DNA of 64,000 bases from Saccostrea echinata (Eukaryota): the NCBI RefSeq assembly GCF_033153115.1, contig NW_026889803.1, positions 27,404,001 to 27,468,000 on the forward strand. The letters are read 5' to 3'. Below are positions 17,697 to 43,739 of this stretch, in pieces (positions within the stretch are counted from its first letter, which is position 1; every line of letters starts with the position of its first letter). The notes beneath the pieces are model-generated. The model worked only from the letters and a program-made list of their open reading frames with translations, did no database searches and was not told the origin of the DNA. Made by a program: the position numbers and the translations under genes.

Positions 17697-31546
<13,850 letters not shown>

Positions 31547-34500: not shown

Positions 34501-35421
34501 AGTGAAAACATAGATATGTGCCTCGTAAATAAGGCATCAATGCACTAGCTTCAGCAATTACATTTGCTAAACACTCACAATTACACCAAGCAAATAAAAA
34601 AAAATGTCCATTCCCAGATTTCATTCATCTCTTAACAATTACATGCATAGGGAAATGTTTTCAACCTGAATTTAGAAAATAGCAAGTGTAAAAGAAAAAT
34701 TCTAATAAAAATAAATGTTTACATTGCTACATAGAATTAAAAAGACACTTAAGAACACATACTTTGGAAATGAAAATGCCATAAACAAAAAAACATTTTT
34801 CTTCAAGTATTATATATAAAAATTTTCCAAGCAAAAATTACCCGGTAACTGAAGATTAAATTTTATGAGGGAGAATGGTTTACAGGTTACTGAAATATTT
34901 GTATGTATGAAAAAATAGAAAGACTAGACAATGTGTAACAATAGCAGATATATAACATAAATCTTGTATGATTTAATATAAATCAATTAACTTTGTAAGA
35001 TATGCAAGGCTGTAAAAAGTGCACAGTCTGTAAGTGAATACAGCTGAGGCGCTGACATGTATTGTTGTTCACCAGTAGTAACTTCAGTAGTAGAAGAGAG
35101 TAACCATAAATGTACACAAAGGCTTTTCTCTAACCATGAAGTGCAGACACCAGATTCTTGATCAAGTGTCTGAAAAACAAAAAACCAGATGTGAATTTTA
35201 CAGCAATTGTGCAAAAAATCTAATGAGTCTAAAGTTCAGATGAAATATGAAAGACAACTGTACAAATATAGGATTTAGGGTGACATCCACATAAATCAAT
35301 GCACCTTTTTTGGTTACCCTAACAGCAAAGTGAGAAATAAATAACAACACTCTTAAGGATCAGTTCTGCACCAATTTAGAATACAATGCTTACAGGCACA
35401 ATTTTTTTTTCAGAAAGACTT

Positions 35422-38400
35422 TCAACGTTGAGTTTTGAGGGTTACGGGTTTATACACAGGGGCCTTTGAGCGAGGTAGAGGTGGATTTCCAATGATGATA
35501 TCCGCTGCTTTTTCAGCAATCATAATTGTAGGTCCATTTAAGTTGCCACTAACAACACTAGGCATTATGGAGGCATCAACAACCCTCAATCCCTCTACAC
35601 CATACACTCGTGTACTGGGATCTACGACAGCCATGGGATCCGTCTCTGATCCCATCTTACATGTACATGAAGGATGATAGGCACTGTCTGCCATATTTCG
35701 ATTATATTCATCAATCTGTTTGTCAGTCTGGACACTGTCCCCTGGAGCTAATTCTGGACCTCTGAAGGAATCAAACGCCTTCTGTTGGAAGATCTCTCTT
35801 GTTAGCTTTATGCTGTCTCTCATTTCCCGTATATCCAACTCTGTTGTAAGGTAATTTGCAACCAAACGGGGATGCTCTTTGGGATCAGCAGATTTCAACT
35901 TAAGGTATCCTCTACTCGTTGGGCGCATTGGTCCTACATGAGCTTGGTAAGCATGTCTATCTCCTGGTTTCCTTCCATGGTCATTGACGGTAGAGGGAAG
36001 GAAATGGTACTGAATGTTGGGATGTTCGACTCCTGGCTCACTCCGGATAAATCCTCCAGCTTCCAGATGAGCTGTTGCTCCATCCCCTGTCTGCCTGAGA
36101 AACCATTCAAGACCAATCTTAATCATCACATGAGGAAACTTCCATTGGGCCTTGTAAAGTGTGATAGGCTTTTTACACTCTTGTTGAACATAGACTTCCA
36201 GATGATCCTGGAGGTTTTCACCAACCCCTGGTAGATGCTGAACAACTGGAATATCCAATTTTCGTAGATCATCTGCATTTCCAATTCCAGACAGCATTAG
36301 TAGCTGAGGAGAATTGATTGCCCCACCACTGAGTATGATTTCTTCTCCATAGACTGTCTGGATATCAGAATGCCTTTCATATTCTATTCCTACTGCCCGC
36401 TTGCCATTAAATATGATGCGTCTTGAAAGAGCACTGTTCAGTGTAGTCAGGTTGGCTCTTTCTTTTAAAATAGGATGTAGATATGCTGCAGCAGAACTGC
36501 ATCTCTTGCCTTTACCAATTGACATGTCCATCCATCCAAATCCCTCTTGTTGGAAGCCATTCATATCATCTGTGTATGGGTATCCTGCTTGAATTCCAGC
36601 TTCTATAAAAGCATTGAAGAGAGGGTTGTTCGTCTTTCCTCGGGATACCTGGAGTGGACCATCACCCCCTCTATAATCATTTGCTCCTAATTCATGGCAC
36701 TGAGCTTTACGGAAGTATGGTAGGCAGTCAGCATAGGACCAGCCCTTTGCTCCTTCTTTTTCCCACCTATCATAGTCCAGAGCATGACCTCGGATGTAGA
36801 CCATTGCATTGAGGGCTGAGGAGCCTCCCCAGACTCGCCCTCTGGGCCAATACATGACACGGTTGTTCATGCCTTTTTCTGGCTCGGTATGGTAATACCA
36901 GTTGTACTTGTCATCACATAAATTATACATTAAAGCAGCAGGCATGTAAATCTTCCAGGAATCCCAAGCCCACAGGTCACGAGGTCCTGCCTCCAGAAGG
37001 AGGACACTTTTAGCTCGGTCAGCAGTCAAGCGATTTGCTAAAGTGCACCCAGCAGAGCCAGCCCCAACAATAATGTAGTCATATTTGTTCTCCTTAGAGG
37101 ATATATGATCCATTCGCTGACTAGATGTGCTAAAATATCTACGAGGCTGATGTAAATGAGAAGCTCTCGATGATGATGATGGAAAGCTTGAAGCAAATAA
37201 TTTCCTACCTGCTCTCTGAGCTTGCTGTTTTGTGTTTTCAGTATAATTTTCATTTTGAAGAATAATATCAGAAATCCCTTCTATGCTAGGAATGATACTG
37301 TCTGCATACAGCTTCAACTGTTCCTCTGAACCCACGCCTGATAAAACTCCGATTTTCTGCTTGACGAAAGCAGACTGTCCCATCTGTAGATCTCCAACAG
37401 AATCTCCCACAACAATAGTTCTAGATGGACTAACATGTAGTTCATCACAAATCAACAAAGTGTTATGTCCTGATGGACGAGGCTGAGAAATTGGATCATC
37501 CCCACATATTAGCATATCCACATATTTAGTTAAACCCAAGTTCATCAAGTCTGAAATCACAAATTCTCTTGGTTCACCAGTATTAATGGCAATTTTCATT
37601 CCATTTTGCTTCAGTTCTCGGAACAATCCCTCAATATTGGAACACAGTGGTGATGGTTCAGCTTTCAGAATGACGTCTGCTTCTCTCCATATCTGGTTGA
37701 CAATCATGATGGCTTCCTGGTAGAATATCCCCTCCCTCCTCAGAGCCTCTACCAGGGCCCCTCTGACCTCTGATGGAGTGCCCTCTGATAGGACCCCATG
37801 CATCACTCGAGTAGCCTCTTTATTTAATCCAAGTAACCTACTGACTTTTTCTGACATGTCCAATCCAGTCATTTGCTTCAATCTAGAAAAAAATTAGAAA
37901 TATTTCTATTAAAAATTTATACAGTTTTAATAATTTCCAAGGCCAAAAAACGACCAGATTACAATTATCAAAAAAATAAAAATTATAACCGAGATGCAAA
38001 ACTCCTGAGAAAAATGAATAAAATTACTTCAGTATCAGGAGGTAACTCTCTTAAAATTTGACTTCATTAACAATGTAACTTACTACTAAACAATTATTTT
38101 ACCTAGAACAGAGAAATTCCACAAATTTGGGATATTTCCTATGTATACAGATGAGAGTTCCATGAAAATCAAATATCACCAAGTCTGCCGGGGCTTTCTT
38201 TGTGTTGGGTATAGGGGTATCCTGCTCAGTGGGTTCCACCAAAAACCTCTCATACTGGGAATAGGCGTAGCAACTCTTCAGGTCCTCTGAAGGTAAAATC
38301 AGGGGTAAAATATCCTCAATGTCATTGACTACATGGTCAGCATGAGGCAGCAAATCTCCTGTCTGCCCCACCCCACTTAGGACTCCCACACTCCACCCCA

Positions 38401-39824
38401 GCTTTGCTGACTTTCCTAGAAGCATGTCTGTTTTAGTATCTCCCACCATTACTGCATCAGATGGATCAATTCCCAGTTTCTCACAGATCTTCAATGCATT
38501 GTATGGAGCAGGTTTTGGTTCCGTATCGGGATCATCTCCACAAATGACATGCTCAAAGTACTTTGTTAAGCCTAGTTCCTGTAGCAAGGCATCTGTACCT
38601 TTGCGGTTGTCAGATGTAATGAGAGCTATTTTGACTTTGTTTTTCTGTAGGATTTTGAAGAGAGTCTCTAGATCTCCAAGCTTTTTCATTTCCTCTGGGT
38701 TTGTGACATTGCCCTCGGACCACACCGAGTCTAGAATTTCTCGTACTTGTGATTCTTCCATTCCCTCTCCAACCAACATCTTTGTCATTTCATCCTGAAG
38801 TATAAACAATCTTGTATATTTTCTGTAGTATTACCAATTTTTGTTTTGGAAGATAATATATAAATGATTTATTTACAAAAATAACCTTATCTATGACAAC
38901 AAGATGTGTTGGTGAAACACTATGTCTCAGACATCAACAGATTTCCTCCATTTTACATTTGACCTTGAAAGGGGGGAGGAATAAGGGTCAAGAGATTGAG
39001 ATACACTGTAACTGTCATACCTTGATCTCGCCAGATGTGGCTTCTGCCAGAAGTCCTGGCATCACCCTTTGTTTCTTGGTGCAAAAACCAAGGACATCAT
39101 AAATCTTGTCCTGGATCCCTTTACGACCAGTCGCTTCTTCAATACTGGAACAGAAATAACAATTTATTCATACAGGTTCACTACAGAGTACCATAGTTCA
39201 AACAGAAAAAGGAAATCATGTTATTCTTTAGCTTTCTCAAATGGGACTTTTCCATAGCGTTTTAGTGTGACATCTGATTTTTTTTTTTCTTTTTCTATAC
39301 AAATACTCTTAATATTGTAATCTGTTAACCTTTTGCATCTAAGTTTTCTGAATTATGAAAAAAAGGCTAACATTCAGAGACACTTTAAATTTACAAAAAA
39401 AAAAAATATATATATATACCTTGTGACTAATTTTTTGGCCCAAGGTGTCCACATTGAGTGAAAACATATTAGAGTGCCATCTTTGTCAAAAATGACAAGA
39501 GATGCTTTCTTAACTTTGTCTGTACGGCGTTTGACATTATTGACTGTAACACTGCCTTGGAAACTGGCTGCTGACCAAGACACATTCCTGGATTTCAAAG
39601 GCTTTCCCTGTTTATCTGTTTCAGAAAATATAATAATTAAAAGTACAGTTTTGATCAATTATGACTAATCACAATCTTCTGGATGTTGTTAATTAAAGCT
39701 TACATGATTTTCTTGAGATGCTGCATCCTACTGCAGTTGTATGAAGAGATCTGGACTGCACAAACCGCTGGGCTTGATAAGATCTCGTCATTACACGACG
39801 CAACAAATGTGTTCCTGACATCAT
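35422..39824 (-). CDS. CHDH: Mitochondrial fusion protein: presequence + 2x HAD-like hydrolase + choline dehydrogenase (GMC oxidoreductase), ~1197 aa, 5 coding exons
   Basis: Exons 39824-39704, 39615-39420, 39144-39021, 38794-38103 and 37882-35422 have GT/AG junctions and join in frame (3594 nt). HAD1 motifs: [28 protein letters not shown]2 motifs: [28 protein letters not shown]/BetA-CHDH motifs: [83 protein letters not shown]. Confidence 0.92.
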
Positions 39825-40107
39825 GAAGTATCTGTTATCAGTTACTTTCCATCAGAAAACCTATGAAAAAAAAAAAGAAATTAACAAAGATGTCAATCTG
39901 ATGAATGAGAAACCAGTCATCATGTGGCAACTTCCACTCCTCGTAACATTGAATCCTGAGTCTTCTATTCATATGTACACATCTGAAGTCTTATATGCCC
40001 AAAACTGAAGGATTCTCATAATTGAACGATTTTAATGCACAGACCAGTTAAGGTAATAAATTGTTAATCATCAATAATTTTGATGATGAAACTATTCATT
40101 GACAAGC

Positions 40108-40949
40108 GTAACAGGAAAGGAGAAAATGTATGGCTGGATAGGGAACCGAACACAGGACCCCTGCATCACTAGTCAGGTGCTCTACCGACTGAGTTACCCA
40201 GGTCGATATCCACAGCCGAAACCATTACATTCCTCCCTCCTTAAATTGTTTTCGAAGACACAACCCAAGTTCTTATTTGCCCCTGGCAGGACTTTCACCT
40301 GCAATTCCAGTGGTGGTCACAGGCACCAAATCAGTAACAGGAAAGGAGAAAATGTGTGGCTGGACCTCAAATCAAACCTGGGACCCCTGCATCACTACTC
40401 AGGTGCTATACAAGCTGAGCTACCCAGGCTGATATCCATGGCTCAAACCATTACACAAGTGTAAAAGAAGATAATTAAGGTATCAATTTGGATAAAACAG
40501 AATTATTGTTGGTGTAATGGTCTGGACTGTGGATATCAGTCTTTGTTGCTCTGTTGGTACAGCACCTGACTAGTGATGCAGGAGTCACAGGATTAATTCC
40601 TGGTCCCAGCCTTACATTTTCTCCTTTCCTGTTACAACCATTTGGTGCCATTGACCACCCTAGGACTTTCAGGTGAAAGTCTGCCAGGGGCAATTAAGAA
40701 TATGGGTGGTGTCTTCGATGGCAAAGACAATTTAAGGAGGGATCGAGGAATGTAATGGTTTGGGGCATGGAGATCAGAAGCATATAATATATTTTATAGG
40801 CTTCAGATGTGTACAAGACAATTTAAGGAGGGATCGAGGAATGTAATGGTTTGGGGCATGGAGATCAGTCGGTAAAACACCTGACAAATGATGCAGGTGC
40901 CCTGGGTTTGATTATTGGTCCAGCCATAAATTTTCTCCTTTCCTGTTAC
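40108..40949. repeat. Foldback of tRNA-derived (SINE-like) ~226-bp units: two on the minus strand, two inverted on the plus strand
   Basis: GTAACAGGAAAGGAGAAAATGT at 40108 and 40334; reverse-complement copies end at ~40635 and ~40949. Each unit has a tRNA-like core (TCAGTCGGTAGAGCACCTGACTAGTGATGCAGGGGTCC...GTTCG). Confidence 0.8.
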
Positions 40950-43739
40950 ATATTGGTGAAGAGCAACATAATACAGACGGTCCCAGGTTCGACCCCCAAG
41001 ATGGGTAACTGCCTATAAAATTTAAATAAGAATATTACGTTTACAATTGTATTACAATGTCCATTTTATAGGTCTAATTACAACATCACTTACATGTTTA
41101 TAATGCTAATGCTTCACATCCACCATGTAGTCGTACAGTCAGTTTAATGTTAAATTCTTACTGAATGACCATGTCTGTCTGACCTTTCCTTTATCTATTC
41201 ATGGTCATCACACAGGGTTACCGAGTTCTTGGTCTACACCAGCATCACGTTAGTCTATCCCCCCCCCCCTTTCCAATAACCGGTCTTTTCAATAATCGTC
41301 AGATCTAACATTTTGATCAATTAATCCACTATATTGTCCATCACTGAGACATCGTACATAATGTACTGATGTCATTATTTAAGGCCTACCTGTAAATTTC
41401 TGTCAAACGAGTGCACCGGTTGATTTGTTGATACTGTAAACCGACAAGGCCTTGGAAAAAACACGGTAGTTTTCCAACATCGTGTGCTTTTCACGCTTCA
41501 TTGATAAGATTCTAAATACTAAGTAAAGGCGGGCCAATCAGAGCTCATTTTACATTACAAATCATGAATAAACATATCGGAAATGAGAAAATACACGCGT
41601 GTTGAAAACATGCGGTTCTTTTAAGGTTTTTTTTTAAAGGGGGGTCTTCATTATGATATTTAAGTTAATCATTACAGTTCTTGGGGAAAAATCAAATTAA
41701 ATTCGTTTAAGGACAGATGATAGAATAGAATAGAATATTTATTCAACCAATTTGGGCCCACAGTGGAGCATAAAGATGAACAATTAATGTCCGAAATCAT
41801 ATAAGTCATAAATAACAATAAACAGAACAAAACAAACAATTGTATATTGAACAGAGAGTTAGTCGTCAACTTTAAGGATGCATAAAATGTATACAAATAG
41901 TATATTCAATTTCAATTCGTTTATTGACCAATTAAGGGCACTCACAGGGCAAAAAGAAAGTACATTGTTAAAATGTATATAATGATTATGATCGTACACA
42001 CGAAATACAATATACATATACATAAGAGGGAAAGAATTGCTTGATTGATAGAAAAGACATACAAGTAGGGGAATACCCAAAATATTTTATATGAACATAA
42101 GACTTGTTTTATAGGTATATACATATGGAGATACAGTACATCATATATATATATGCATACATTAATAAACCATATACTTGAAAGTATCATACTTTTACAT
42201 AATTAATAATAATAATAAAAAAAAGTTACATTCCTTATGATAATGTTTTTTGGAAAAATCTTCCAAGAGAGTTTAGTATATTTAGTTCTTCGCAATTTAG
42301 AATCCAGAATAATTTTTGTTTATCAGGCAATTCTGTAAAATGTTTTACTTTGGATGAGATAAAGTTAAATAGGTCTTGTCTTTCCTTTGTAAATTTGCTA
42401 CAGTGAATAAGGAAATGTTCTTCATCTTCAATTTGATTAAGCGTACAATTTTTACATATTCTTTCTGATCTGGGTGTGTTATTATATCTGCCTAATTCTA
42501 TGAAAAGTCTGTGCGCTGATACACGTAATCTACATATTGGTTTTCTGTATTCAGGTTTTAATAAAATTAGATATTTTTCCAATCTAAAATTGTTCTTCAG
42601 AAATAAATAAGTGACAAGTTTGCCCTCTTTTAGTGTTTCATTTGAGTGTTGCCAATCAAGTGAGTATTTTTTATTCATGGATTGTTTTAATGAATTCATA
42701 AAATTACTCTTAGTATAGGACATTATGTTTGGGATATCAAGAATTTTTAGTAATTTTTCTATTGAGGAGTACCAAGTTGTTTTTTGGGCGAAATGAAGTT
42801 CCTTACTACATATAAATGCATCTTTTAGTAAAGGGAAATCTGAATTTAAATTTTCTAATCTGTAGCAATATTTAAGTAACATGTTGATAATATCATAATG
42901 TAAAGGATATCTACCTAATTCTGAAAGAGAGGCATGGTTCGTACTTTTCCTTTTCAAACCTAGTATAGTTTTACAGAACTTGATGTGTAAATTTTCTCCT
43001 GTAAAGTTTTTATAGCATAGTTGCATCAATATTTGATTAGATTGCTTTATTTTTGAATTATTAACATTAAATATTCCCCATATTTCTGAGCCGTAAAGTA
43101 ATATAGGCTTAATTGTGTGATCAAAGACATTGAGGCTAGTGGATATCCCATTATATGTATAATGACTGTAATATGCCTATATTGTACTATGTTGTTTTCT
43201 CATTTAAATGTTGGCATAATATAAAACAACAAAGTTAACTCAGAATCTTCATTTGACATTATCCATGTAAATAGGTCCACATTATTAAGCAGTATTAAAT
43301 TTGGAAAAGTTTTAAAGATTTTGTTTAAAAACTCTCCTCTAGAATCATTATACAATGGACATATTCTAGCAAAAAATGTATTTCATCCTCAGTTGGACTT
43401 GAAGTACAGTAACGACAGACTCTTTCACTCCTAGGAAGAATTTCATTTTAACCACATTTATTAAATATCCTTTCATATCTACCCGTCTCTACCCTTAAGC
43501 AATGATTACTAATTCTGAATTTTGTGAGAATTACCCCGATTGTCCCGGTTTTTCATATTAGTATTTTTCAAAATTGAATGACCTTTTATACTTAATCATG
43601 GAGGAGATTGTGTAAACACATCAAATAGTTTCAACAAGCAAGGATTGATAAAGTGTTGTGATGCTTTAAGCATTTCATTTGAAATATTGTCTAATCAAGG
43701 TGTTTTTTTTTTCAACTTAAGTTTAGAAAATGCTTCTTG

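What the first reader, a model, noticed from the sequence alone, without database searches (positions are those of the whole stretch)
35422..39824. Tandem HAD phosphatase-choline dehydrogenase fusion: candidate one-gene route from a phosphorylated precursor to betaine osmolyte
Seen in sequence: five exons splice in frame into ~1197 aa. HAD2 runs into the GMC domain within a single stop-free exon, so the fusion does not depend on my gene model. Established: CHDH/BetA (~550-600 aa, standalone in vertebrates and bacteria) oxidises choline to betaine aldehyde, glycine betaine is a major bivalve osmolyte, and some HAD enzymes (PHOSPHO1, Pseudomonas PchP) are phosphocholine phosphatases. Inference by Rosetta-stone logic: the HAD module supplies choline from phosphocholine or a related phosphoester inside mitochondria. 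Alternatively, since the HADs resemble Gph/PhnX-like members and molluscs are phosphonate-rich, it may act in (methylated) aminoethylphosphonate catabolism. I know of no characterised enzyme with this architecture.
Basis: partly seen in the sequence, partly recalled or inferred. Interest (0 to 1): 0.93.

Follow-up and report, generated by a model that had tools for sequence, protein, structure and literature searches.

The report
Oyster choline dehydrogenase fused to HAD phosphatases
This oyster gene really does encode one 1197-residue mitochondrial-type protein that joins two HAD phosphatase-like domains to choline dehydrogenase; the design is old and widespread in invertebrates and appears in public annotation, but I found no study of it.

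Summary
Confirmed. On the minus strand, five coding exons plus one 5' non-coding exon give a 3594-nt CDS of 1197 aa. Single spliced contigs from two independent studies span all coding exons. RefSeq holds the same model at 99% identity (Saccostrea echinata, "uncharacterized protein").

The C-terminal part passes NCBI's betA equivalog cut-off. It is the only CHDH type in this genome, alongside a near-identical copy and a 76% paralog.

HAD1 keeps every catalytic motif. HAD2 has D-x-H-G-T in nearly all molluscs (Asn in Aplysia) and a variable motif III lysine, so it is probably impaired or regulatory.

The architecture is not mollusc-specific:
- HAD-HAD-CHDH occurs in molluscs, nemerteans, an annelid and a free-living flatworm.
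- HAD-CHDH occurs in amphioxus, hemichordates, crinoids, a copepod, a nematomorph and an acoel.
- The same HAD is free-standing in nematodes (C. elegans F45E1.4) and cnidarians.

The HAD-CHDH linker is disordered, basic and acid-free, and carries a conserved R-x-[F/Y]-S-T motif. It looks like a retained presequence, so internal MPP cleavage is possible.

The phosphocholine-to-betaine idea is plausible but untested. One indirect support exists: the marine nematode orthologue rises at high salinity. The phosphonate alternative has no support. Two other first-stage notes of this scan on the same window (s1-816105, s1-816226) had already raised the linker and the HAD duplication.

The parts
41390..41470 (-). 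5' non-coding exon 0. The 3' end at 41390 is defined by a GT donor at 41389-41388. The 5' end is approximate.
   Evidence: The loose ends of the spliced contigs at 39859-39862 match 41389-41413 uniquely. The sequence was read.
39704..39860 (-). Exon 1. ATG at 39824-39822. It encodes residues 1-40 and part of 41, a basic, acid-free N-terminus that looks like a presequence.
   Evidence: Residues 1-72 contain no Asp/Glu and 13 Lys+Arg. pLDDT is below 30.
39420..39615 (-). Exon 2. End of the N-terminal extension and HAD1 motif I (FDKDGTL, nucleophile D84, acid/base D86).
39021..39144 (-). Exon 3. First part of the HAD1 cap domain, including the conserved PGLLAEAT motif.
38103..38794 (-). Exon 4. 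Rest of the HAD1 cap and core (motif II T207, motif III K241, motif IV GDTKTD 265-270), the inter-HAD linker, and HAD2 motif I (FDFHGTL: D356, H358).
37110..37882 (-). Exon 5, first part. HAD2 cap and core (motif II T, motif III Arg in place of Lys, motif IV GDSVGD), then the disordered presequence-like linker (protein residues about 588-641, with RRYFSTS).
35422..37109 (-). Exon 5, second part. BetA/CHDH-type choline dehydrogenase (GMC_oxred_N and GMC_oxred_C, FAD motif GAGSAGC) and the stop codon. The 3' UTR continues below 34900.

Best explanation
This is the oyster's choline dehydrogenase gene. It is transcribed as one mRNA and translated as one 1197-residue precursor. The parts in order are a basic N-terminal presequence-like segment, HAD1, HAD2, a 50-residue disordered presequence-like linker, and a BetA/CHDH flavoenzyme.

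Shown:
- the gene model;
- the fusion transcript;
- the domain identities;
- conservation across bilaterian phyla;
- the origin of HAD2 by a tandem exon duplication in the lophotrochozoan stem;
- the loss of the Asp+2 acid/base in mollusc HAD2.

Inferred:
- The precursor is imported into mitochondria.
- HAD1 is an active Mg-dependent phosphomonoesterase. Its most likely job is to release choline from phosphocholine, or a close amino-alcohol phosphate, for oxidation by the CHDH part to betaine aldehyde. This would feed the osmolyte and methyl donor glycine betaine.
- HAD2 is a catalytically weakened partner, either a pseudo-dimer mate or a regulatory domain, as described for the DxD-deficient HAD of human ACAD10.
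- The conserved R-x-[F/Y]-S-T linker may be cut by the mitochondrial processing peptidase, so that the two enzymes are made in fixed stoichiometry and then separated.
For: Fusion and gene model:
- ORFs and domains.
- Spliced contigs from two studies across all exons.
- Identical RefSeq model.

CHDH identity:
- TIGR01810 betA scores 754.5 against a 732.1 cut-off. NF002550 scores 833.9 against 605.
- The best solved relative is 9lq0, an oxygen-dependent choline dehydrogenase, at 605.7 bits over the full length.
- No other CHDH-like locus exists in the genome apart from the fusion copies.

Conservation:
- HAD-HAD-GMC occurs in bivalves, gastropods, cephalopods, nemerteans, Owenia and Macrostomum.
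- HAD-GMC occurs in Branchiostoma, Glandiceps, Ptychodera, crinoids, Lepeophtheirus, Gordionus and Convolutriloba.

HAD1 activity:
- D-K-D-G-T, T207, K241 and GD..D are kept in every mollusc HAD1 and every single-HAD relative aligned.

HAD2 state and origin:
- Asp+2 is His, or Asn in Aplysia, in all molluscs. Motif III Lys is variable.
- Mollusc, nemertean and annelid HAD2 form one clade with 97/93 support.
- Introns 2 and 4 sit at the same position, 22 residues after the nucleophile, in phase 2.

Mitochondrial and polyprotein reading:
- In most of the 20 fusions examined (15 of 20 on the table), the segment just before the FAD fold is the longest or second-longest acid-free basic run, and the N-terminus is among the top three runs in 13.
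- R-x-[FY]-S-T lies just before the FAD fold in protostomes and deuterostomes.
- The linker has pLDDT about 27, while both HADs score 80-92.
- Precedents for internal MPP cleavage are Arg5,6 (PMC8734313), Atp25 (PMC5063612) and ACAD10 (PMC11342911).

Osmolyte link:
- The Litoditis marina orthologue of F45E1.4 is up at both mRNA level (1.8- and 2.2-fold) and protein level (2.2- and 2.9-fold) at high salinity (PMC9025465 Table 2).
- Oyster CDH expression and betaine content track salinity (PMC11849188).
Against: - No substrate data exist for any member of this HAD subfamily.
- Its nearest solved and curated relatives are generic HAD-IA enzymes (Gph, PpaX, NANP, AlnB, MtlD phosphatase). All score far below family cut-offs.
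- It is not related to the known phosphocholine phosphatase family PHOSPHO1 (no PF06888 match).
- Phosphocholine is not known to occur in mitochondria (my own knowledge).
- Trematodes keep a HAD-HAD protein without a GMC domain. Nematodes and cnidarians keep the HAD as a separate protein. The HAD function is therefore not strictly tied to CHDH.
- Salinity induction in a nematode would fit a glycerol-3-phosphate phosphatase equally well.
- Targeting and cleavage rest on composition and motif only. No predictor and no protein data were available.
- The full-length model has pTM 0.47, so nothing can be said about domain packing.
Confidence: 0.45

Rival explanations
1. The HAD module is an active phosphatase for a substrate unrelated to choline, for example glycerol-3-phosphate, phosphoglycolate or another sugar or acid phosphate, or pyrophosphate. 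It would be joined to CHDH only because both are mitochondrial or osmotic-stress enzymes that benefit from co-expression.
For: - The best curated model matches are Gph and PpaX types.
- Structural neighbours are Gph-like, NANP and the mannitol-1-phosphate phosphatase domain.
- Trematodes have HAD-HAD without CHDH.
Against: - All curated matches are 3- to 9-fold below their cut-offs.
- A fusion held for more than 500 million years in at least ten phyla usually marks steps of one pathway.
- The family has its own invariant cap residues, W96, W99 and E140. These would suit a cationic head group, although that reading is only an inference.
Confidence: 0.3
2. The HAD domains are mainly regulatory or structural for CHDH, through allosteric control, membrane or complex assembly, or import. 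They would not supply a substrate, as proposed for the HAD domain of ACAD10.
For: - Mollusc HAD2 lacks the Asp+2 acid/base and often the motif III Lys.
- The ACAD10 HAD, which has an incomplete DxD, restrains the neighbouring kinase (PMC11342911).
Against: - HAD1 and every single-HAD relative keep all four catalytic motifs without exception across cnidarians, nematodes and deuterostomes. This indicates selection for catalysis.
- The HAD exists as a free enzyme in nematodes and cnidarians.
Confidence: 0.12
3. The HADs act in catabolism of aminoethylphosphonate or methylated phosphonates (PhnX-like C-P cleavage), feeding a trimethylated product to the GMC enzyme.
Against: - The scores are far below the cut-offs of 220 and 218.9.
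- Gph and PpaX models score higher on the exon 4 piece. On the exon 5 HAD2 part, PhnX-like is marginally the top HAD model.
- HAD1 has the phosphatase-type D-x-D. PhnX uses a different Asp+2 residue and a cap lysine (my own knowledge, not tested).
- The family is present in nematodes and amphioxus, where phosphonate richness is not established.
Confidence: 0.04
4. The fusion is an artefact of assembly, read-through or gene prediction, and the HAD and CHDH parts are separate proteins from separate mRNAs.
For: The linker looks like the presequence of an independent CHDH. An internal transcription start could not be examined with contig-only runs.
Against: - HAD2 and GMC share one stop-free exon.
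- Spliced contigs from two studies join all exons.
- The same architecture is present in dozens of species.
- In this oyster no Met lies between residue 544 and the one 13 residues before the FAD fold, so no internal start gives a presequence.
Confidence: 0.02

Closest known systems
Choline dehydrogenase BetA / mitochondrial CHDH (GMC oxidoreductase; TIGR01810, solved relative 9lq0)
   Same: The C-terminal 557 residues match over the full length and score above the equivalog cut-off. The FAD motif is present, and the invariant His and Asn of the GMC C-terminal motifs are kept.
   Different: It carries about 640 extra N-terminal residues: a presequence-like segment, two HAD domains and an internal presequence-like linker. 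Vertebrate and bacterial enzymes are stand-alone.
HAD superfamily subfamily IA phosphatases with a C1 cap (Gph, PpaX, NANP/HDHD4, AlnB)
   Same: The fold and four-motif catalytic core of HAD1 match, with PF13419 and PF00702 hits. Foldseek gives E about 1e-12 to 3d6j, 2w4m and 2hsz.
   Different: Only about 20% identity, and all curated equivalogs fail. The subfamily has its own signature ([12 protein letters not shown], MWx[10 protein letters not shown]) and is restricted, among named hits, to animals.
Bifunctional mannitol-1-phosphate dehydrogenase/phosphatase MtlD of Acinetobacter (7ocn-7ocu)
   Same: One polypeptide joins a HAD-IA phosphatase to a dehydrogenase to make a compatible solute. 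Its HAD domain is among the nearest structural hits.
   Different: The dehydrogenase family differs. The order of the reactions also differs: the phosphatase acts last there and would act first here. MtlD is bacterial and cytosolic.
Mitochondrial tandem precursors cut internally by MPP: yeast Arg5,6 and Atp25, human ACAD10
   Same: An N-terminal presequence, a second presequence-like segment with an Arg-containing MPP-type motif between two enzymes, and a disordered linker. ACAD10 also carries a HAD domain with an incomplete DxD motif (PMC8734313, PMC5063612, PMC11342911).
   Different: Cleavage is not shown here, and the enzymes are different.
Phosphocholine phosphatases PHOSPHO1 (animals) and PchP (Pseudomonas)
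   Same: They are HAD-superfamily enzymes that release choline. PchP feeds the BetA/BetB route in bacteria (my own knowledge).
   Different: There is no PF06888 match, so any shared activity would be convergent within the superfamily. PchP was not compared.

Membership tests
BetA/CHDH choline dehydrogenase (GMC oxidoreductase) | GMC_oxred_N and GMC_oxred_C domains over the full length | tested here: met
   PF00732 at 2.7e-56 and PF05199 at 7.1e-38.
BetA/CHDH choline dehydrogenase (GMC oxidoreductase) | Score above the curated equivalog cut-off for choline dehydrogenase | tested here: met
   TIGR01810 scores 754.5 against 732.1. NF002550 scores 833.9 against 605. The margin on the equivalog is narrow.
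BetA/CHDH choline dehydrogenase (GMC oxidoreductase) | N-terminal FAD-binding GxGxxG and the conserved C-terminal His/Asn active-site motifs | tested here: met
   GAGSAGC at 651-657. H1114 and N1158/N1160 are invariant in 28 orthologues. Their assignment as catalytic residues comes from knowledge of GMC enzymes and was not superposed.
BetA/CHDH choline dehydrogenase (GMC oxidoreductase) | Oxidation of choline to betaine aldehyde | not testable with these tools
   Needs an enzyme assay.
HAD superfamily phosphatase, subfamily IA | Motif I DxDx(T/V), motif II S/T, motif III K, and motif IV (G)DxxxD in HAD1 | tested here: met
   D84-K-D86-G-T88, T207, K241, G265-D266...D270. All are invariant in relatives.
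HAD superfamily phosphatase, subfamily IA | The same four motifs in HAD2 | tested here: not met
   Motif I is D356-F-H358-G-T. The Asp+2 is His in all molluscs, or Asn in Aplysia. Motif III is Arg here and K/R/P/N elsewhere. The nucleophile, motif II Thr and motif IV are kept.
Phosphoglycolate phosphatase Gph / pyrophosphatase PpaX | Score at or above the curated equivalog cut-off | tested here: not met
   NF009695 scores 70.4 against 225. TIGR01449 scores 50.8 against 180. NF009804 scores 61.3 against 218.
Phosphonoacetaldehyde hydrolase PhnX | Score at or above the curated cut-off | tested here: not met
   TIGR01422 scores 42.4 and 29.5 against 220. TIGR03351 scores 53.5 and 51.8 against 218.9.
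PHOSPHO1-type phosphocholine/phosphoethanolamine phosphatase | Match to Pfam PF06888 (Put_Phosphatase) | tested here: not met
   No such match at E <= 0.01 for any exon product.
MPP-processed mitochondrial tandem precursor (Arg5,6 / ACAD10 type) | Internal presequence-like segment with an Arg-containing MPP-type motif between two folded enzymes | tested here: met
   Residues 594-635 are acid-free with 8 K+R and contain RRYFSTS. The motif recurs across phyla. The linker has pLDDT about 27.
MPP-processed mitochondrial tandem precursor (Arg5,6 / ACAD10 type) | Mitochondrial import and demonstrated internal cleavage | not testable with these tools
   Needs protein-level data. No targeting predictor was available.

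The most novel reading that the evidence does not exclude
Across Bilateria, a dedicated mitochondrial HAD phosphatase and choline dehydrogenase are made as one tandem precursor. It is imported and then cut by MPP at a retained internal presequence, which yields a stoichiometric two-enzyme route from phosphocholine to betaine aldehyde. This would identify the unknown phosphatase step of animal betaine synthesis and add a metazoan-wide example of a mitochondrial polyprotein. In lophotrochozoans a duplicated HAD would have become a pseudo-enzyme partner.
Probability: 0.22. Interest if true: 0.8.

Novelty: new variant of a known kind. Interest (0 to 1): 0.6.

Why it matters
Glycine betaine is a main osmolyte and methyl donor of marine invertebrates, and oyster work treats "CDH/CHDH" as an ordinary stand-alone enzyme. 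The enzyme in oysters, and in many other phyla, is in fact half of a larger protein. Its other half is an uncharacterised, animal-specific HAD phosphatase family with a tractable C. elegans member, F45E1.4.

If the HAD supplies choline from a phosphoester, it fills a gap in animal betaine synthesis. It would also explain how salinity could control flux at one gene. If the linker is cut by MPP, this is a widely conserved animal mitochondrial polyprotein. Both ideas can be tested with standard assays.

Tried and rejected
I therefore could not inspect gene neighbourhoods of the C. elegans orthologue, or of the unnamed 800-aa ENA/Logan proteins. Those proteins most likely are exon-5-type open frames of other invertebrates.
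- Sequence and profile searches of the PDB and Foldseek with a confident model of the free-standing HAD (pLDDT 84.7) gave only generic HAD-IA neighbours. No substrate could be inferred.
- The ESM Atlas look-up added nothing on vertebrates. A label on copepod and nematode entries hints that a fish protein might carry the HAD ([quoted passage not shown]).
- The full-length model has pTM 0.47, so I draw no conclusion on contacts between domains.
- Complex prediction was not used, because the report does not claim a specific interaction.
- Literature searches for the fusion found nothing relevant.
- The sequencing runs were contigs only. Transcript starts, strand and expression level could not be read, so a minor internal start cannot be excluded.
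Exons were searched by reference, and full-length analyses used the public model P0001 returned.
- An acid-free run of 42 residues is not unusual for a single protein (12% of shuffles). The argument for the linker therefore rests on its recurrence at the same place in most orthologues.
Full report
**Observation**

The finding lies on the minus strand. A single stop-free frame of 819 codons (35422-37881) holds three things in order:
- the C-terminal two thirds of a HAD domain (PF00702, PF13419);
- a linker;
- complete GMC_oxred_N and GMC_oxred_C domains.

A 236-codon frame at 38099-38809 holds the core of another HAD domain and, at its end, a second motif I. A 94-codon frame at 39374-39658 holds the first motif I.

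Reading the strand gives five coding exons:

| Exon | Coordinates |
|---|---|
| 1 | 39860-39704, ATG at 39824 |
| 2 | 39615-39420 |
| 3 | 39144-39021 |
| 4 | 38794-38103 |
| 5 | 37882-35422 |

All four introns are GT..AG, with lengths of 88, 275, 226 and 220 nt. The CDS is 3594 nt, or 1197 aa.

Each exon was used by reference. Full-length analyses used P0001, the RefSeq model "uncharacterized protein LOC133197787 [Saccostrea echinata]" returned. The exon translations match P0001 with 6 differences in 1193 residues.

**Transcript evidence**

Five runs from two studies hold more than half of the sampled words of the stretch. Laid on 34900-40300, one contig in X1 (4631 nt) and one in X2 (3613 nt) pass colinearly through all five coding exons with the introns removed. 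A third sample shows the same joints in overlapping pieces.

The contigs continue 5' into a non-coding exon that maps uniquely at 41390 and upstream. They continue 3' beyond 34900. These runs are contigs, so starts, strand and level cannot be read from them. The absence of introns shows that they derive from spliced RNA.

**What the parts are**

The GMC part passes the curated models for choline dehydrogenase. TIGR01810 betA scores 754.5 against a cut-off of 732.1, and NF002550 scores 833.9 against 605. Its best solved relative is an oxygen-dependent choline dehydrogenase, 9lq0, at 605.7 bits over the full length.

A six-frame search of the whole assembly found no stand-alone CHDH. It found only three fusion loci:
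- this locus;
- a copy on another contig that is 98-99% identical including introns, which is a haplotig or a very recent duplicate;
- a paralog 28 Mb away on the same contig at about 76% protein identity, also with HAD exons.

Other GMC hits are weak single-exon matches to other subfamilies. This gene type is therefore the oyster's CHDH.

**The HAD domains**

Both HADs fold confidently in a full-length AlphaFold model, with pLDDT of 80-92. Both belong to one distinct subfamily. All curated bacterial equivalogs (Gph, PpaX, PhnX and others) score 3- to 9-fold below their cut-offs. PF06888 (PHOSPHO1) does not match.

Solved structures are related only at the level of generic HAD-IA C1-cap phosphatases, by sequence, by profile and by fold.

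HAD1 keeps D84-K-D86-G-T, T207, K241 and G265-D266...D270. HAD2 has D356-F-H358-G-T and Arg at the motif III position.

Introns 2 and 4 interrupt the codon 22 residues after the respective nucleophile Asp, both in phase 2. This is the footprint of a tandem duplication of exons.

**Distribution**

Three protein searches and one exhaustive HMMER search gave the following picture.

| Architecture | Length | Taxa |
|---|---|---|
| HAD-HAD-GMC | about 1150-1235 aa | Bivalves, gastropods, cephalopods, nemerteans (Tubulanus, Lineus), the annelid Owenia, the flatworm Macrostomum |
| HAD-GMC | about 860-1110 aa | Branchiostoma, hemichordates (Glandiceps, Ptychodera), crinoids (Anneissia, Antedon), the copepod Lepeophtheirus, the nematomorph Gordionus, the acoel Convolutriloba, and a second Mytilus gene |
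| Free-standing HAD | about 290-330 aa, with a basic N-terminal extension | Nematodes, including C. elegans F45E1.4 |
| Free-standing HAD | with a 150-residue extension | Cnidarians |
| HAD-HAD without GMC | 432-985 aa in the models seen | Trematodes |

RefSeq names these proteins "choline dehydrogenase, mitochondrial-like" or "uncharacterized". The fusion is thus old, probably dating to stem Bilateria, and is visible in public annotation.

A maximum-likelihood tree of 47 HAD domains places the HAD2 of molluscs, nemerteans and Owenia in one clade with 97/93 support. This indicates a single duplication in the lophotrochozoan stem. Flatworm second domains form a separate long branch and may be independent.

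The family signature is intact in every single-domain relative and in mollusc HAD1. It comprises DKDGT, W96, W99, E140 (His or Ser in a few relatives), T207, D209, R211, K241 and GD..D.

In molluscs the degenerate copy is HAD2, with Asp+2 replaced by His, or by Asn in Aplysia. In Owenia the divergent copy is HAD1, which has DKNGT and Arg at the motif III position. The nemertean HAD1 keeps the core motifs and diverges only at cap and flanking positions. One canonical plus one relaxed copy per protein suggests that a single active site suffices, with the second domain serving as partner or regulator.

**The linker and the N-terminus**

Residues 1-72 and 594-635 of the oyster protein are its two longest acid-free runs, with 13 and 8 Lys+Arg respectively. 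Both are disordered in the model, with pLDDT below 30.

In most of the 20 fusions examined from different phyla (15 of 20 on the table), the stretch just before the FAD fold is the longest or second-longest acid-free run. It ends with R-x-[F/Y]-S-T, sometimes twice. This motif fits MPP R-2/R-3-type sites (my own knowledge of presequence motifs).

A run of this length is not rare in one protein (12% of shuffles). The argument rests on its recurrence at one place while the surrounding sequence diverges.

Internal MPP cleavage of tandem precursors is established for yeast Arg5,6 (PMC8734313) and Atp25 (PMC5063612), and is supported by mutagenesis of MPP-consensus sites for human ACAD10. ACAD10 also carries a HAD domain with an incomplete DxD motif that acts as a brake on the neighbouring kinase (PMC11342911).

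Two other first-stage notes of this scan on the same window had raised the internal presequence (s1-816105) and the duplicated, non-canonical HAD (s1-816226). My tests agree with both and extend them to other phyla.

**Mechanism**

Shown: one mRNA and one open reading frame; an intact CHDH; an intact HAD1; a HAD2 that lacks the acid/base residue; deep conservation.

Inferred:
- mitochondrial import;
- phosphatase activity of HAD1 on phosphocholine or a close analogue, feeding CHDH;
- possible MPP cleavage at the linker.

Three lines of indirect support exist:
- The fusion persists across phyla.
- The L. marina orthologue of F45E1.4 is among 69 genes raised at both mRNA and protein level at high salinity, with protein ratios of 2.19 and 2.91 (PMC9025465 Table 2).
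- In oysters, CDH expression and betaine content follow salinity (PMC11849188). That paper's reference list also cites physiological work on betaine synthesis in oyster mitochondria.

Several points count against the model:
- No member of the family has a known substrate.
- The family is unrelated to PHOSPHO1.
- Phosphocholine is not known in mitochondria (my own knowledge).
- Trematodes keep HAD-HAD without CHDH.
- The nematode induction would fit a glycerol-3-phosphate phosphatase equally well.

I put the structural statements above 0.95, the phosphocholine role near 0.35-0.4, and the cleavage near 0.4-0.5.

**Comparison with known systems, and novelty**

The CHDH part is a member of the BetA/CHDH family. 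The HAD part is a member of HAD subfamily IA but of no characterised equivalog.

The nearest functional analogue of the whole is the bacterial MtlD, which joins a HAD phosphatase to a dehydrogenase for compatible-solute synthesis. The nearest analogues in biogenesis are the MPP-cut tandem precursors.

I found no paper that describes or tests a HAD-CHDH protein. The models are in RefSeq and UniProt, so the sequence itself is not new. The unexplored points are the recognition that invertebrate CHDH is a fusion, the animal HAD family behind it, and the conserved internal presequence. I class it as a new variant of a known kind, with moderate to high interest.

**Limits**

- No raw-read RNA runs were available.

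Noticed in passing
G000:C30:35823542-35829908 (loci L002, L007): A second copy of the whole gene lies on another contig, 98-99% identical at nucleotide level including introns. It is either the other haplotype kept in the assembly or a very recent duplication.
   Followed up: partly
G000:C54:55546927-55553194 (loci L003, L009, L012): A paralogous HAD-HAD-CHDH gene lies 28 Mb away on the same contig, at about 76% protein identity. It has the same large HAD2+GMC exon (825-codon open frame) and a HAD exon. Oysters therefore have two fusion paralogs and no stand-alone CHDH.
   Followed up: partly
window 26128-27855 (+): A 575-codon open frame without any Pfam match, rich in Ser, Pro, Lys and acidic runs. 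It ends in ...[15 protein letters not shown], which resembles the start of a NYN/Zc3h12a-type RNase domain (from memory). It is probably a large exon of the neighbouring gene on the plus strand.
   Followed up: partly
window 40100-40300: Inside intron 0 of the gene, many short RNA-derived contigs of high depth end or jump here, with several loose ends. The sequence recurs in two similar copies (open frames at 40099-40464). It looks like a transcribed interspersed repeat. ARAGORN finds no tRNA.
   Followed up: partly
proteins P0277, P0273, P0281 (cnidarians): The free-standing cnidarian members of this HAD family carry a conserved extension of about 150 residues before the HAD domain (motifs such as PW.RP..PR and FSSLAGDG). 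Its function is unknown.
   Followed up: no
proteins P0235, P0340: Nematode and copepod HAD-only fragments are labelled after a fish protein ('Choline dehydrogenase mitochondrial-like [Xiphophorus maculatus]'). This hints that some teleosts may also have a HAD-CHDH fusion. It was not verified.
   Followed up: no
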